This document shows, in pieces, positions 1 to 15,833 of a stretch of DNA of 64,000 nt. Below the pieces are notes generated by a model that did not search any database, had not been told where the DNA came from, and worked only from the letters and a program-made list of their open reading frames with translations. The position numbers were made by a program, and so were the translations under genes. Numbering within the stretch: position 1 is the first letter of the stretch; each line of letters starts with the position of its first letter. The stretch is from Macrostomum lignano (lineage: Eukaryota), in contig NIVC01001938.1 in assembly GCA_002269645.1 (NCBI GenBank), positions 1 through 64,000 on the forward strand. The letters run 5' to 3'.

Positions 1-1202
1 TGTTGCGACAGTCCTCTCAATGTTAGTCACGATATTACAGGGCTGTTATCAGTAGGCATTTGTCTGGCAGACACATCAGCGCCAAAACATCGGATATAGA
101 GTTCCATATTGAAGAGCAGTGATAGCAATTCATTGTTCTCTTCACAGCCAAGTCGACCAACTCGCTGTAAAAATTTGCTAATCTTGTTCTGACTGAAATC
201 TCCATTTTGTGGCAGTGCAGGGTAAAGATTATCACTGATTTCATGCTGAATGGACCGCACGTCTCCATGCATGTAGCGTATAATGCTATTTGGGTTTCTC
301 ATGTTAATAATAATATACCTTGGATTGCTGCATGATACCTCTTTAATGCGGATGTTTGTTCTAGTTTCGTTTCGCTCATCTCGACACATGTAGGCCCGTG
401 TATGCAACATCAATGTCCTTTCTATTGCCTTAAGATAGTCTGCTTTTAGTGCAGTCTTTGGCTCAATGACTTCCAAATACAGCTCGATTCGGTTAGCTTC
501 ACCTCCATCCTTGTGTGATCCGCCCCAGTCCACAACACTCTATGCGATCATCTCTAGTCATCCTAAAGGTGTAGCTAAAGTTACTGTCAGTCGATTAAAT
601 GTATTACAGAATCCACTCATGAATCTCAGTGGTACAAAATACATCAACAGAACCGATACAGCGGGTTCTTAGCAGCATCATCAGCACCTTTGCAATGCAT
701 AGTTGTATCTCTTCTTCCTATTTTTATAACCACTGTCATTGATATCTCCTTCTTTTTCGTCTGCAATAAAACCCGCACCACTTCCCAACTGAATAAAATC
801 AGGATTCTCGATCAAACAATGAGCGTCATAGACAATTCCAAAGTTGGCGATTCGCTCCAACTCAGTGCTCCCATTCGATACACTAAACTCCTTGAACATG
901 TACGCCCAAAGTTACTGATCAGAGCCACATCCATCATGCTTGTCAACGTTAGCACGAGCCGCATCCGCACTACCCTTTGTCTTGAATTGAAATGTCATAT
1001 GGAAGCCGCTCTTAAGCTGTGCACACTAACCAAAGACGAACATCCATTGTATGTAAATGTCAGTGTTTGACCAGGACCAAGATATAGTTTCATTCTGATT
1101 TTCCTGACTGGGAACTCTTACCTGAGTCGCTTTGATTGTGCTATCATCACTCAAAATAGGCTTGTTAATTCTGTAGAAAACTGGTGTCAGTGGGTCGTCA
1201 AT
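1..1202 (-). pseudogene. Polinton major capsid protein (PY/hexon-like), frameshifted, start codon apparently ATG>ATT, 3' end beyond window start
   Basis: Fragments DDPLTPVFYRINKPILSDDS..., MFKEFSVSNGSTELERI (681-899) and SNPRYIII...NLYPALPQNGDFSQN (27-533) resemble successive segments of Polinton MCPs, but lie in different frames. Confidence 0.72.
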
Positions 1203-1232
1203 TTTTTAACTAAAAATAAAATAAAATAAGAA

Positions 1233-2363
1233 ATGAAGCGAAAAAGTACACAGCAGATATCTGAATTGGAAAAGCTAGCACAAGCAGAGAAACGATTTAC
1301 TGGGCTAATAAATAAGGAGCAACAATCCTACAATGAGTTTGTCCAAGCAGCCACAGAGTTTCAAAAGGCTTTGGGCAAAATTCCAGAAGCACCACAGATA
1401 CAGCCGCAACCACAGACACGACCGCAACCACAACAATCACAACCACAACACACACAAACAGCAACTAAAAGTGACAGATAACATTTTTGGACCAGTAGAG
1501 CGTGTAGAACATGATGGGAAATATGTATTTGGAATAAGTATGTGGAGAAAAAATATTTATAATGAACCAGTGGAATATTATATCGACATAAATAAGAAAC
1601 ATATTTCTGTTGTCAAAGGCTCGGAAACTAAGAGCATTCCTTTCACAGAAACCTTACTGAATTTTATGACCAAGAACCAAGAGAGAATCTCGGATAAGCA
1701 GCTAGAACTACAAGATCTAGTGACTTTTTCTCTTGCTAGAGATATAGAAATACTAAAGGTCCCAGAAGTTCTGAAACACATGTACGATAGCGGTGTCAAC
1801 CTGACTAGATTCAAAAAGTACAAACACTTTAAACAATGGTTCGATTTGCCAGATCAGGCGAAGTCATAAAATATCTAGAAGCAACAACAACAACAACGCA
1901 CAACACAACCACAGACGCACAGCAGCAACATTTTACAGAAGACTCAGGCAAATGAAAAATGCAGATCCGACTCAAGTAGCTAAATATAAAAATGATCACC
2001 CAGATGCCTGGCAACACTTAGAACAACACTCTCCAGATCGAATGAACAGAATCAAGCAAAGAGTTTTCAAACCTCAACAAAGACAGGCACCACATGACAG
2101 TTCCATCTCTGAAGTGAGCAGTCTTTTGCATCACCCCTCCAGCAGCTACAAGCCCAACCAACTCCACAACCAAGACCAACCGCCTCAACTGGAAAAGGAA
2201 TTTCTGAAATCTACAAGCGAGTAGCGTTCTTCTAGGAGCGCAAAGACCGGAATGAAAGATGAAAATAGAAAAGAATTTGTCAACATCCTGGACAAAATGC
2301 TTGAGAGAAAATACATCGATAAGAGGCGAGAGAGCTTCTGCTTTCGCGTTCAACAAAAAATAA
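1233..2363 (+). pseudogene. Polinton conserved protein (PZ-like), frameshifted
   Basis: Overlapping ORFs 1233-1481, 1333-1869 and 1952-2224. DNIFG...GKYVFG...FTETLLNFMTKN segment and C-terminal KEFVNILDKMLERKYI resemble PZ-type Polinton proteins (recognised by eye). Confidence 0.4.
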
Positions 2364-2379
2364 TTTATTTCAAGTAAAA

Positions 2380-2633
2380 ATGCCACTTATTTTCGAAAAA
2401 GACATTGACAAATACTATGACAAAGAGGAACTTAATCTTATTAAACGTGGATCTGGACTTTTCCTGCAGGCCACTATCCAAGAAAAGAACGCTCTGGGAA
2501 TGGCCTTGCTGATTTGATCGCTCAAGGGCCAAGATTTTTAAGGTCATTGGAGAGAACAAAGAGAACATCAAGAACGTTGCCGAAGCGGCTGGCAGTGTAG
2601 CCACAGCAGCCAAAAAGATAAAGGATACGTAAC
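2380..2633 (+). pseudogene. Small putative virion core protein, frameshifted
   Basis: MPLIFEK...KRGSGLF and, after a shift, GNGLADLIAQG...NVAEAAGSVATAAKKIK. Gly-rich motifs like those of adenain-processed core proteins; TAAAAATG start context. Confidence 0.35.
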
Positions 2634-2847
2634 ACTGTAACACCTGTAACTGTACCTGTACTGTAACACCTAAACAAGAGATTCAACCGCCTGCTCCGCT
2701 GGCTCCGCTGGCCCCAAATCCAGACAGTGTAGACCCTGCAGTCTATGAGAAGATGAGAGCAAGCATTAAAAAAGGAAGTGGTTTCAAATTTGACTAAAGG
2801 TACTTTCCGAGGGTACAAGAAATGTAAAGGTACAAGACTAGTCCTAA

Positions 2848-13437: not shown

Positions 13438-13704
13438 CTACAATTGCTTATTGATTTCTGCAAAGTTATAGTAGCTGTCGTAATCTTTTACGTAGGTTAC
13501 TCCATACTTATGAAACCAGTGTCTTTGGAGAGCTAGATTAATATTAGGGACATTGATATCAACGCCGGGCCAATATTTTCTCATGTACTCGCTGCATTCA
13601 AGTTTGCATCGGTACTTACTCTTGTAATTAGGCTCGTGCGCTTTGTAATAAGAACCTGGAGAGACAACTGGAAACATTTTTAGAGAAAATTTAATTTTTT
13701 TCAA
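13438..13704 (-). CDS. Hypothetical Polinton accessory ORF
   Basis: 88-aa ORF near the element end; no motif recognised. Confidence 0.25.
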   Translation of the reverse strand: MKKIKFSLKMFPVVSPGSYYKAHEPNYKSKYRCKLECSEYMRKYWPGVDINVPNINLALQRHWFHKYGVTYVKDYDSYYNFAEINKQL

Positions 13705-13889
13705 AGGGTAAGGACCCTGGGTTAGGGGATTTAAAGTTTTAGGGATGTGGTAGCACGTTGCGGATTGAATGTGGGGAGAAGAATTCAGATTATTTTCTGA
13801 TTGTTTCGAAGATGCTATGGGTGGATGTCAGTGAATTATAATGGGATTATGTTCGAAGTTTTCGGAACAAGTAGGACACCTGTTATGCT

Positions 13890-14104
13890 ATGATTCTGTC
13901 GGGGATAATACGGATGGATTTAATGGGATTATGTTCGAAGTTTTTGGAGTAAGTGCGACCCCCCTTTTTTCTGATTCTGTCGGGGATAATACGGATGGAT
14001 TTAATGGGATTATGGAGGACGTTTTGTGAGCGAGTGCGACTCCCTCTTTTTTTCTGATTCTGTCAGGGATAATATGGATGGATTTAATGAGATTATGGAG
14101 GACG
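13890..14104 (+). repeat. ~81-bp subterminal tandem repeat (3 copies) at the Polinton right end
   Basis: TGATTCTGTCGGGGATAATACGGATGGATTTAATGGGATTATG recurs at ~13892, ~13973 and ~14055. Confidence 0.85.
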
Positions 14105-14176
14105 TGAAAAATTTTGTCCCAAAAGCCCCCTCATGCCTTCTACTTTATCCTCATGTCGTTTCAACCCAACCCGCAG

Positions 14177-15833
14177 ATCCCGAGGAGTTCATCAACCTGC
14201 TGCTGGACCACGTGCTCCGTCATGAGCCGTTCATCAAACTGAGCACTGGGCAGAGCTCCCATGTGCTGCAGCTGTTTCTTGATCGGGCCGATTTGCCTTT
14301 CGAACAGCAGAAGCAGCAACAGCAGGTGTGTCTTTTGAATTAATACTGAGACTATTGGCTTAAGGACTTGCAATCTAATTACCCCCTGGGTGCGGAGGCT
14401 GAAATATTGCAATAGAAGTAATATTTAAACTGCCTTCTTTAGTCATTACTATTGGCTTCTTGGCATTGAAATGTGTAAAACTGAAAAAGCTCTCGCTGTG
14501 CCTTGAAATTATAATCTATCTCGCCTGGGGTATTGTAGTGACTTTGCATCGGGCCTAGGTGTATTAACTAACTAACTTTGAGGCTAGAATTGTTCAGTTA
14601 CCTTATATGCATCGTGCGTTCAATTATGGTATCGTGCACATGACTACATGTATGTGACAACACTGTTGTCAACGTGCACATGACTATAAATATATTGAGC
14701 GAGACCCAGGTGTCTCCAACTGAATTGAATTCATCAATTAACTAAAAACACAACAGGTATTTGCAGCTTTGAGTTTTTTAGCTTTGGCCATGGCATCAGC
14801 CATGGCATCTCAGCAACTCCCCATTGAGCCAATTGGCATCTCAGCAACTCCCCATTGAGCCAATTGGCATCTCAGCAACTCCCCATTGAGCCAATTGGCA
14901 TCTCAGCAACTCCTCCTTGAGCCATGACATGACAGCAACGCTTGTATTATTTGCGTTCCCACAGCAGCAGCAGCAGCCGCATTCCACTGGTGCACGCGAG
15001 CACATCGCGGACACTGAGACCCTGCTGCACCTGTCGCTAATCCAGAGCAACATCCAGTTTAGCGAGCCGCCGCAGTGCCTGATCCTGCAGATGCCTCGAT
15101 CTGGAAAGTCATATAAAATGTTCCACCGCATCCTGCCAGTGCTGCAGTTGAACATCACCAACCTGCTGCCGGACACCGCCAGGGCCTGCAACATCTGCGG
15201 CAACTTTGCCACTATCGAGTGCCATCAGTGCTTTCTCAAGCACGACTCCGGCCGAGACTACACCTATTGCGAACCGTGCTACAAGGCGTTTGCGGATCAC
15301 AGAAAGGGAAAAACGCACGAGCCAATCAAGATTAAATATCCCAGGCATATCCTGGAGAAATATAAGAGACCCGGACAAATTGTTAAAAGTCAGACAGTCA
15401 TGGATCTGCTGGCTGTTGTCTGTATTTGCACCAGCCACTACGTCTGCTTCTTGAGGGCCGAGCCCAACCACTGGCTGTTCTTCGATAGCATGGCCGATAG
15501 GGAGGGCGGTGAGTTCAGACTAGCTTATTCCCGTGTCCGCACATTCTGCTTAATCCATCCCGATTTCATCCCTATCACCCATTCCATCCCCATCCCGATC
15601 CCTATGCCAGCCCCATTCTAACCAGTTCATAAATGATTGAATTTCCAGGCTGCAACGATGGCTACAACATCCCGGAGGTGACCCGCGTCGATGGCCTTGA
15701 AGAGTGGCTTCGCGATCTTCAAGACAAAACAGGCAACGCACCGCCTCCAGAACAGGGCAACCGCCTGCTAGAGGATTGCTATCTGTGCTTCTACGGCAAT
15801 CCAAGATCTGTGCCCTTCCCTAGCAGCTCCTGA
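14177..15833 (+). CDS. CYLD: CYLD ubiquitin hydrolase, 3' exons only (14177-14325, 14965-15508, 15649-15833)
   Basis: DPEEFINLLLDHVLRHEPFIKL, CLILQMPR, B-box cysteines (CNICGNFATIECHQC...YCEPC), His box TSHYVCF, WLFFDSMADREGG, GYNIPEV, RLLEDCYLCFY. AG/GT boundaries are phase-consistent. Confidence 0.95.
14797..14917 (+). repeat. ~31-bp intronic tandem repeat (GCATCTCAGCAACTCCCCATTGAGCCAATTG, ~4 copies)
   Basis: Directly visible in the CYLD intron. Confidence 0.85.

What the first reader, a model, noticed from the sequence alone, without database searches (positions are those of the whole stretch)
1..15833. Whole Polinton/adintovirus apparently inserted in an intron of CYLD
Seen: the CYLD exons present begin mid-USP domain (DPEEF), and no catalytic Cys-box exon occurs in the window. 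The exon acceptor lies only 32 bp after the candidate viral terminus (CTACT at 14144). Established: CYLD removes K63/M1 ubiquitin chains in NF-kB and innate signalling; Polintons have AGT-type termini and 6-bp TSDs. Inference: a viral element of over 14 kb occupies an intron of an immune regulator and may affect its splicing or expression.
Basis: partly seen in the sequence, partly recalled or inferred. Interest (0 to 1): 0.75.

Follow-up and report, generated by a model that had tools for sequence, protein, structure and literature searches.

The report
Decayed virus fossil beside CYLD exons
A mutation-riddled, no longer functional copy of an adintovirus-type (Polinton/Maverick) DNA virus sits directly in front of the last three exons of an animal's CYLD gene, probably inside a long intron; this is an ordinary kind of genomic fossil rather than a whole virus.

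Summary
Window 14177-15833 holds three cleanly spliced exons that encode the C-terminal about 73% of a CYLD USP domain. No Cys-box exon exists anywhere in the 64 kb.

Window 1 to about 11700 is a real Polinton/adintovirus-type element. It carries a double-jelly-roll capsid gene, an A32-type packaging ATPase, an adenain-like protease, a protein-primed PolB, an rve integrase, a protein-X-like ORF and a PLA2 ORF.

It is not whole:
- The left window edge cuts the capsid gene.
- The penton gene is missing and is expected further left.
- Six of the hallmark genes are broken by stops or frame changes.
- Only the PLA2 ORF and one small conserved ORF look intact.

The proposed right terminus (CTACT at 14144, TSD TTATCC) has no support. 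There is no inverted copy in the window. Window 11.7-14.2 kb has a different composition and only orphan ORFs. The 81-bp repeats there resemble this genome's many minisatellites.

The intronic position is the most likely reading, but it rests on downstream exons only. This is a new member of a known kind (endogenous Adintoviridae-like element), of low interest.

The parts
1..1202 (-). Double-jelly-roll major capsid protein gene. It is broken (7 in-frame stops and 1 frame change), and the left edge of the window cuts it, leaving about 30 codons outside.
   Evidence: The nearest relative P0141 (423 aa, 50% identity, Pfam PF21738 DJR-like_dom) aligns over residues 1-393. The family profile from IMG/VR relatives gives E=4e-6. 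L008's homologue matches PF21738 at E=7e-56.
1239..2221 (+). Conserved element gene of unknown function, divergent from the capsid gene. It is broken by 2 frame changes.
   Evidence: It is homologous to the 336-aa ORF that is divergent from the capsid gene in relative L028 (37-71% identity in three frames). There is no Pfam match.
2869..3767 (+). Packaging ATPase gene (Pox_A32 / FtsK-HerA type). It is broken by at least 3 frame changes.
   Evidence: The family profile is covered over positions 15-218 of 236 by four pieces, with E down to 2e-16. There are pairwise hits to 12 loci. L008's homologue matches PF04665 at E=3e-8. A P-loop-like motif was read.
3960..4448 (+). Open stretch of 163 codons with a coiled-coil look and unknown function. 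It is in the same frame as the next ORF and separated from it by one stop.
   Evidence: There is no significant family match.
4566..5219 (+). Small conserved element ORF (217 codons from its first ATG) with a hydrophobic Gly/Ala-rich segment. It appears intact.
   Evidence: The profile of three relatives gives E=3e-15 over profile positions 41-206 of 218. The pairwise hit to the L008 ORF is 1e-13. Its 3' part is also matched in L004.
5227..5603 (-). Adenain-like (clan CE) cysteine protease gene, broken by 2 frame changes. The His motif is no longer in frame with the Asp/Gln/Cys part.
   Evidence: There are pairwise hits to 8 loci, best 1e-8. The alignment keeps the D, Q and C columns. Five of 8 relatives match PF00770 Peptidase_C5.
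5702..9067 (-). Protein-primed family B DNA polymerase gene with an N-terminal endonuclease-VII-like domain. It is broken by 5 frame changes, and the first about 134 profile positions were not found. The longest open stretch is 391 codons.
   Evidence: There are 6718 homologues, many with PF03175/PF02945. The family profile (1226 positions) is covered over 135-1223 by six pieces. Intact relatives have one ORF of 1294-1320 aa. Polymerase motifs A, B and C are readable. PF02945 matches at E=6e-5.
9674..10054 (-). Protein-X-like ORF (127 open codons). It has no ATG ahead of the domain, so it is probably truncated at its 5' end.
   Evidence: Pfam PF05829 Adeno_PX scores 26.5 bits against a cut-off of 25, E=6e-6.
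10151..11178 (-). Retrovirus-type (rve) integrase gene, broken by 1 frame change inside the catalytic core.
   Evidence: PF00665 covers only half of the core in the first ORF. The family profile is covered over 1-120 and 122-221 by two overlapping ORFs. Identity to the integrase fragment of relative L003 is 53-75%.
11207..11698 (+). PLA2-domain ORF (163 aa), intact and divergent from the integrase.
   Evidence: PF08398 matches at E=1e-13. Eight relatives of 145-180 aa align full length at 63-68% identity, and the YCGP and HD..Y motifs are invariant. The model's best folds are secreted PLA2s, weakly. The same divergent INT/PLA2 pair occurs in L003.
11699..13830 (-). Stretch of uncertain ownership. 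It holds AT-rich spacer, three orphan - strand ORFs of 129-160 open codons, and a heat-shock-element array with a TATA box.
   Evidence: No ORF here matches any relative. CpG o/e is 0.98 against 0.57 in the core. ORFs this long arise in 3.5% of shuffles, and three are seen.
13790..14134 (.). Tandem repeat of about 81 bp (3-4 copies). It ends 10 bp before the proposed terminus.
   Evidence: It is not found in viral or metagenome collections. The host part of the window holds many minisatellites.
14177..14325 (+). CYLD exon (mid-USP, starts at DPEEF, phase 1).
14965..15508 (+). CYLD exon (USP with B-box insertion and His box).
15649..15833 (+). Last CYLD exon, including the stop codon.

Best explanation
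Window 1 to about 11.7 kb (possibly to about 14.1 kb) is the larger, right-hand part of one endogenous, mutationally dead copy of an adintovirus-type Polinton/Maverick (class Polintoviricetes).

Shown:
- Seven recognisable virus genes lie in a compact two-strand arrangement.
- Six of them are inactivated by stops or frame changes.
- The capsid gene runs off the left edge of the window.
- Immediately to the right lie the last three intact exons of the host CYLD gene on the + strand.

Inferred:
- A virus genome was integrated by its own rve integrase into the intron that precedes the DPEEF exon, and it then decayed as neutral intronic DNA.
- The primary transcript now runs through more than 14 kb of dead virus, which is removed by splicing.
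- The Cys-box and CAP-Gly exons, the penton gene and the left terminus lie left of the window.
- The element is no longer capable of anything on its own. At most, its two still-open small ORFs and any promoters are left as raw material.
For: Gene content:
- PolB.
- Integrase.
- Capsid.
- ATPase.
- Protease.
- Protein-X-like ORF.
- PLA2.

Synteny with relatives:
- The local gene pairs are the same as in the nearest relatives. INT/PLA2 are divergent as in L003. Gene X and the capsid gene are divergent as in L028. PolB is followed by the protease as in L008.
- In L028 the capsid gene is followed by a penton gene. This places the missing penton left of the window.

Decay: break counts are.

Size: relatives are 15.6-19.8 kb contigs. 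That fits 14 kb plus 1.5-3 kb outside the window.

CYLD:
- The three exons have canonical splice sites and a continuous 291-residue product that matches CYLD (E=1.4e-50).
- The first exon starts in phase 1 in mid-domain, so it needs an upstream exon.
- No Cys box is in the window.

Background:
- 96% of Maverick loci in vertebrates are likewise degraded (PMC8097293).
- Endogenous adintoviruses are widespread in animals (PMC8502044, PMC11131425).
Against: - No upstream CYLD exon, no left terminus, no inverted repeat and no target-site duplication can be seen, because the window starts inside the element.
- The 2.4 kb next to the exon differ in CpG content from the core and have no homologue in any relative. 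The element may therefore end near 11.7-12 kb, with something else filling the gap.
- A true insertion only 32 bp from an acceptor would sit in the branch-point region, which would be expected to harm splicing.
- Neither the contig nor the window's own proteins could be found in the public collections, so the contig could not be extended.
Confidence: 0.68

Rival explanations
1. The Polinton remnant ends near 11.7-12.0 kb, just after the PLA2 ORF. The 2.4 kb between it and the CYLD exon are a different thing: a second insertion with its own small genes and heat-shock-type promoter, or host intron DNA with a minisatellite. On this reading the 'terminus at 14144' and the 'TSD' are meaningless. 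The intronic reading itself may still hold.
For: - Composition breaks near 12 kb. CpG o/e is 0.98-1.14 against 0.47-0.77, and TpG/CpA is 0.9-1.0 against 1.04-1.35.
- None of the three ORFs matches any ORF of 28 related loci or IMG/VR.
- In relative L003 the PLA2 ORF is followed by a penton gene. Here it is followed by AT-rich spacer.
- Minisatellites are common in the host part of the window.
Against: - The three ORFs of 129-160 open codons are more than chance gives.
- They lie on the same strand as the integrase and PolB.
- Accessory genes of adintoviruses are highly variable (PMC8502044).
- In L008 the integrase and PLA2 genes lie within about 2.4 kb of the contig end, so a terminus 2.4 kb beyond the PLA2 ORF is plausible.
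Confidence: 0.4
2. The three exons are an orphaned 3' fragment of CYLD. This could be a partial duplicate, or a gene whose 5' part was lost or separated by the insertion or a rearrangement. The element would then not lie in a functioning intron.
For: - No upstream exon is in the window.
- The frame stays open for 57 codons upstream of the acceptor, with two in-frame ATGs. This occurs in 3% of shuffles.
Against: - All three exons are open.
- All splice sites are canonical.
- The His box and B-box are conserved, and the product aligns to the very end of the CYLD USP domain. A dead fragment as old as the decayed element would be expected to show damage too.
Confidence: 0.15
3. The junction is an assembly artefact. 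A repeated virus-like element was joined to the CYLD locus through the tandem repeats.
For: The join region holds an 81-bp tandem repeat. The element belongs to a family that is usually multi-copy.
Against: - The window has no N runs or gaps.
- No other copy or fragment of the element is in the remaining 50 kb.
- The repeat is short (about 0.3 kb) and easily spanned by reads.
Confidence: 0.05
4. The CYLD-like exons are cargo of the virus: a captured host gene fragment that acts as a Cys-less decoy. The true right terminus would then lie beyond 15.8 kb.
For: The right terminus is undefined. Viruses often capture regulators of ubiquitin signalling (general knowledge).
Against: - The exons are separated by spliceosomal introns of 639 and 140 bp, one of them holding a host-type 31-bp minisatellite.
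- GC is 0.49 against 0.40 in the element.
- The first exon starts in phase 1 without its own start.
- Intact Mavericks have intronless genes (PMC8097293).
- No relative carries such a gene.
Confidence: 0.03

Closest known systems
Adintoviruses (family Adintoviridae, class Polintoviricetes; Starrett et al. 2021, PMC8502044), especially those with the PLA2X-type virion module
   Same: - Animal host.
- PolB plus rve integrase.
- Double-jelly-roll capsid, A32/FtsK-type ATPase and adenain-like protease.
- A parvovirus-VP1-like PLA2 domain protein.
- An adenovirus protein-X-like domain.
- Size class of 15-20 kb.
   Different: - Here the protein-X-like domain is found by Pfam in a separate ORF, not at the C-terminus of the PLA2 ORF.
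- The copy is dead (at least 21 breaks) and integrated.
- The nearest sequences are only 50-68% identical in protein. They come from unnamed ENA assembly contigs, not from named adintoviruses.
Degraded endogenous Mavericks/Polintons of animal genomes (Barreat & Katzourakis 2021, PMC8097293; stony corals, PMC11131425; the endogenized adintovirus on human chromosome 7 in PMC8502044)
   Same: A genomic fossil with stops and frame changes in the hallmark genes. Its termini are no longer, or not yet, discernible.
   Different: - Gene order differs from the two-module order of vertebrate Mavericks.
- It also differs from the IMG/VR relatives: the ATPase block is inverted relative to PolB.
- Two small ORFs remain open.
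IMG/VR contigs L005, L008, L009 (15.6-17.6 kb, uncultivated virus genomes)
   Same: They share PolB, integrase, PLA2, ATPase, protease, capsid and the small conserved ORF.
   Different: - Their genes are intact (PolB is one ORF of about 1300 aa).
- They carry a penton gene and discoidin-domain ORFs that are absent from the window.
- PolB identity is only 37-39%.
CYLD (human USP domain structure 2vhf)
   Same: The joined exons align to residues 100-369 of the 374-residue construct, including the B-box insertion and the His box.
   Different: - About 43% identity.
- A poly-Gln insertion.
- The Cys box and everything upstream are not in the window.

Membership tests
Polinton/Maverick (Polintoviricetes, Adintoviridae-like) | Protein-primed family B DNA polymerase | tested here: met
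   Homologues carry PF03175. The family profile is covered over 135-1223 of 1226 positions. The gene is broken by 5 frame changes.
Polinton/Maverick (Polintoviricetes, Adintoviridae-like) | Retrovirus-like rve integrase | tested here: met
   PF00665 gives a partial hit. The family profile is covered by two ORFs. The gene is broken by 1 frame change.
Polinton/Maverick (Polintoviricetes, Adintoviridae-like) | Double-jelly-roll major capsid protein | tested here: met
   P0141 (PF21738) aligns at 51% identity over 398 columns, E=6e-116. The gene is broken and is cut by the window edge.
Polinton/Maverick (Polintoviricetes, Adintoviridae-like) | Penton (minor capsid) protein | tested here: not met
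   The penton family profile (PDB 6qi5_M 'Penton protein', E=0.0035) and the penton ORF of the nearest relative find nothing in the window. By synteny with L028 the gene is probably left of the window.
Polinton/Maverick (Polintoviricetes, Adintoviridae-like) | A32/FtsK-type packaging ATPase | tested here: met
   The gene is broken by at least 3 frame changes.
Polinton/Maverick (Polintoviricetes, Adintoviridae-like) | Adenain-like cysteine protease | tested here: met
   The gene is broken by 2 frame changes.
Polinton/Maverick (Polintoviricetes, Adintoviridae-like) | Terminal inverted repeats | tested here: inconclusive
   No inverted copy of 13300-14176 is anywhere in the window. The left end lies outside the window.
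Polinton/Maverick (Polintoviricetes, Adintoviridae-like) | 6-bp target-site duplication and AG/AGT...CT/ACT end motifs | not testable with these tools
   Only one side is available. CTACT at 14140-14144 is 5 of the 6 bases of the (ACT)2 motif reported for vertebrate Mavericks (PMC8097293), but it is not distinctive.
'Intact' (potentially active) Maverick in the sense of PMC8097293 | All core ORFs open, plus TIRs and TSD | tested here: not met
   Six genes are broken, with at least 21 breaks in all.
Adintovirus PLA2X-type virion module | PLA2 domain protein | tested here: met
   PF08398 matches at E=1e-13. The ORF is intact and aligns full length to 8 relatives.
Adintovirus PLA2X-type virion module | Protein-X-like domain at the C-terminus of the PLA2 protein | tested here: not met
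   Pfam finds Adeno_PX in a different ORF (9674-10054) and not in the PLA2 ORF. The C-terminus of the PLA2 ORF is hydrophobic and Gly-rich but unassigned.
CYLD deubiquitinase | USP domain with B-box insertion and His box | tested here: met
   The joined exons align to 2vhf_A residues 100-369, E=1.4e-50.
CYLD deubiquitinase | Catalytic Cys box | tested here: not met
   It is absent from all six frames of the 64 kb. It is expected upstream of the window.
CYLD deubiquitinase | N-terminal CAP-Gly domains | not tested
   No full-length query was available. None of the larger + strand ORFs in 1-14176 gave a CAP-Gly hit in Pfam.
Intronic insertion | Exons of one gene on both sides of the element, on the same strand | not testable with these tools
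   Only the downstream exons are in the window. The contig could not be extended.

The most novel reading that the evidence does not exclude
The junction region is not inert. The heat-shock-element array at 13236-13272, or another promoter in the dead element, may drive a stress-inducible transcript. Such a transcript could run antisense through a small ORF. Alternatively it could run in sense into the 57-codon open frame that continues into the DPEEF exon. The sense version would give an N-terminally truncated CYLD without a Cys box, which could modulate NF-kB signalling.
Probability: 0.04. Interest if true: 0.55.

Novelty: new member of a known kind. Interest (0 to 1): 0.15.

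Why it matters
It matters little beyond annotation.
- It adds one more decayed endogenous adintovirus-like element, from a lineage whose nearest known relatives are only about 50-68% identical in protein.
- It shows that an essential innate-immunity regulator gene can probably tolerate more than 14 kb of dead virus in an intron.
- For genome annotation, the PolB, integrase, capsid and other fragments should be masked as a viral fossil and not called as host genes. The CYLD gene model should be expected to span a very long intron.
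- If the intronic position and a sharp boundary were confirmed, the locus could serve as a dated marker of virus-host contact in this animal lineage.

Tried and rejected
- Extending the contig: exact look-ups of two window ORFs found nothing.
- Looking for the left inverted repeat or other copies inside the window: none found.
- Pfam and PDB searches with single broken pieces of the ATPase, the protease and the capsid gene gave nothing. Only profiles built from relatives' ORFs, and the exhaustive protein search, identified them.
- The first two PolB-based loci (L001, L002) shared only PolB. Three look-ups of closer PolB relatives were not on record.
- The PolB profile found no solved structure by sequence.
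- PLA2-based scans of IMG/VR and of metagenome contigs found nothing.
- The 81-bp repeat was not found in either collection.
- The orphan ORFs at 12.2-13.8 kb had no relatives. A single-sequence model of one of them was useless (pLDDT 36), so no fold search was run on it.
- I considered that the repeat-encoded peptide upstream of DPEEF is a relic of CYLD coding sequence. One gapped tblastn alignment extends into it. I rejected this because the extension adds no significant score and a mini-intron model does not keep the frame.
- I considered reading the capsid gene's seven in-frame stops as a variant genetic code. I rejected this because all three stop codons occur and the other genes carry frame changes.
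- I considered reading the CpG depletion of the core as decay after integration. I rejected this as evidence because the nearest relatives are equally depleted.
- L017 was checked for terminal inverted repeats to learn the end motif; none were found.
- Rfam and tRNA scans of the window were empty.

Full report
**Observation: the CYLD exons.**
- The + strand of 14177-15833 carries three exons: 14177-14325, 14965-15508 and 15649-15833. All have canonical acceptors and donors, and the phases fit.
- Joined as they stand, they give a 291-residue product ending at the stop at 15831-15833. It aligns without a break to residues 100-369 of the 374-residue human CYLD USP construct 2vhf_A (E=1.4e-50). 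The single exons already hit CYLD.
- The first exon starts at DPEEF in phase 1, so it cannot stand alone.
- tblastn with three CYLD relatives that include the Cys box and a motif scan of all six frames find no Cys-box exon anywhere in the 64 kb.
- These parts of the finding are confirmed.

**What the element is.** Direct Pfam hits on window ORFs were few:
- An rve half-domain, a PLA2 domain (E=1e-13) and an endonuclease-VII-like domain.
- Adeno_PX above its cut-off.

The longest open stretch of the polymerase has 6718 homologues, mostly unnamed proteins of oysters, corals, crinoids, sea anemones and metagenomes. Many of them carry PF03175 and PF02945.

A scan of IMG/VR gave 23 related contigs of 15-21 kb. 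I clustered their ORFs, built family profiles, and searched the six-frame pieces of window 1-14400. Pairwise searches backed this up. The relatives' ORFs were named with Pfam and PDB. The results:
- Protein-primed PolB on the - strand, 9067 to 5702.
- rve integrase on the - strand, 11178 to 10151.
- Pox_A32-type packaging ATPase on the + strand, 2869 to 3767.
- Adenain-like protease on the - strand, 5603 to 5227.
- A small conserved ORF on the + strand, 4566 to 5219.
- A double-jelly-roll capsid gene at the extreme left, on the - strand.

The exhaustive protein search with the longest open piece of the capsid gene returned a 423-aa protein, P0141. It is 50% identical and matches PF21738 DJR-like_dom. 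It aligns over residues 1-393 to window 1202 down to 13.

With the PLA2 ORF and the protein-X-like ORF, this is the gene set described for adintoviruses (PMC8502044). They are now the family Adintoviridae, class Polintoviricetes (PMC11131425).

**Not whole, and dead.**
- The window's first base lies inside the capsid gene. About 30 codons are missing.
- No penton gene is present. The penton family profile weakly matches an adenovirus penton in the PDB. It finds nothing in the window, and neither does the penton ORF of the nearest relative.
- In the nearest relative of the capsid gene (L028) the penton gene follows the capsid gene. The penton is therefore expected just left of the window.

| Gene | Breaks |
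|---|---|
| Capsid gene | 7 in-frame stops and 1 frame change |
| Unknown gene divergent from the capsid gene | 2 frame changes |
| ATPase | at least 3 frame changes |
| Protease | 2 frame changes; the His motif is out of frame with the rest |
| PolB | 5 frame changes, and the N-terminal about 134 profile positions were not found |
| Integrase | 1 frame change inside the core |

- Intact relatives have a single PolB ORF of about 1300 codons.
- The protein-X-like ORF has no ATG ahead of its domain.
- The PLA2 ORF appears intact. It aligns full length to eight relatives of 145-180 aa with invariant catalytic motifs. A moderate model (pLDDT 64) has secreted PLA2s as its best, weak, fold matches.
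- The small conserved ORF also appears intact.
- This degree of decay is the rule for such loci: 96% are degraded in vertebrates (PMC8097293).

**The right end.**
- There is no inverted copy of 13300-14176 anywhere in the window, and no other copy of the element.
- A 5-base motif is expected about 0.3 times by chance in the 347 bases between the last ORF and the acceptor.
- The stretch 11.7-14.2 kb is different from the core.
  - CpG o/e is about 1.0 against 0.57, and TpG/CpA is about 0.95 against 1.23.
  - There is AT-rich spacer right after the PLA2 ORF. In relative L003 a penton gene follows instead.
  - The three - strand ORFs of 129-160 open codons have no relative anywhere I could look. 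They are, however, more than chance gives.
- The 81-bp tandem repeat at 13790-14134 is absent from the viral and metagenome collections. The host part of the window is full of minisatellites, so the repeat is not evidence of a viral end.
- I put about 0.6 on this stretch being the variable accessory end of the element, and about 0.4 on it being something else.

**Intronic or not.**
- For: the downstream exons are undamaged and need an upstream exon; the element's size fits its relatives (15.6-19.8 kb) if 1.5-3 kb lie outside the window; and there are no gaps.
- Against certainty: no upstream exon can be seen, and the contig could not be extended.
- Rivals, each less likely: an orphaned 3' fragment of CYLD, an assembly join, or capture of the exons by the virus. 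The last is contradicted by the exons' introns, their GC content and the phase-1 start.
- Nothing in the sequence speaks for an effect on CYLD expression.

**Comparison and verdict.**
- By gene content this is a member of the Polinton/Maverick-adintovirus kind.
- Membership features met: PolB, integrase, DJR capsid, ATPase, protease, PLA2.
- Not met in the window: penton, and open reading frames.
- Untestable: TIRs and TSD.
- The nearest sequences (50-68% protein identity) are short contigs of one ENA assembly, ERZ27299534.
- The gene order differs from the IMG/VR relatives. Three local gene pairs are conserved.
- It is a new member of a known kind, of low interest.

**Limits.**
- E-values from my own family profiles refer to a small search space, the six-frame pieces of 14.4 kb.
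- Break counts are minimum counts from alignments to relatives 33-71% identical.

Noticed in passing
window 13236-13272 (array); TATA near 13194-13201 and ATG at 13104 on the - strand: There is a perfect heat-shock-element array (TTCnnGAAnnTTCnnGAA and further units; 1 match in 64 kb against 0.01 expected). On the - strand it is followed by TATATATA and then a 92-codon charged ORF, an hsp70-type promoter layout. It is antisense to CYLD and about 900 bp from the exon. A TATA-like box also lies on the + strand side.
   Followed up: partly
window about 11700-12000: There is a sharp composition break. CpG o/e is 0.47-0.77 in 1-12 kb against 0.95-1.14 in 12-14 kb, and the TpG/CpA excess disappears. 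The nearest relatives of the element are as CpG-poor as the core.
   Followed up: partly
window 14005-14176: The CYLD frame stays open for 57 codons upstream of the acceptor, running into the 81-bp repeat, with two in-frame ATGs. This happens in 3% of shuffles.
   Followed up: partly
window 20225-21231 and 34497-34987: Two arrays of the same GC-rich 15-bp satellite lie in inverted orientation 13.3 kb apart (the AT skew is opposite). They flank ORFs that look, by eye only, like a TPR plus J-domain (DNAJC3-like) gene at 24.8-26.5 kb.
   Followed up: no
window 19193-32979: The host part is unusually rich in minisatellites, with units of 21-32 bp and up to 48 copies. The CYLD intron also holds a 31-bp unit x3.9 at 14803-14924.
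   Followed up: no
L004:2779-2844 versus window 5377-5442: In relative L004 the protease-like match lies on the opposite strand relative to PolB, compared with the window and with L008. This could be a small inversion in one of them or a mis-assembly of the 3.3-kb contig.
   Followed up: no
L003 and L028 (ENA assembly ERZ27299534): The nearest relatives of the PLA2, integrase, capsid and unknown genes all come from one ENA assembly. There the penton gene follows the PLA2 ORF on one contig and the capsid gene on another, so at least two arrangements coexist.
   Followed up: partly
window 7705-8781 (- strand) and many homologues: The PolB of this lineage carries an endonuclease-VII-like (PF02945) domain ahead of the polymerase part. 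It is also found in 8 of 20 aligned homologues.
   Followed up: no
window about 35100-48200, + strand: A long run of + strand ORFs with a P-loop GTPase-like motif suggests a large multi-exon host gene downstream. It was not analysed.
   Followed up: no
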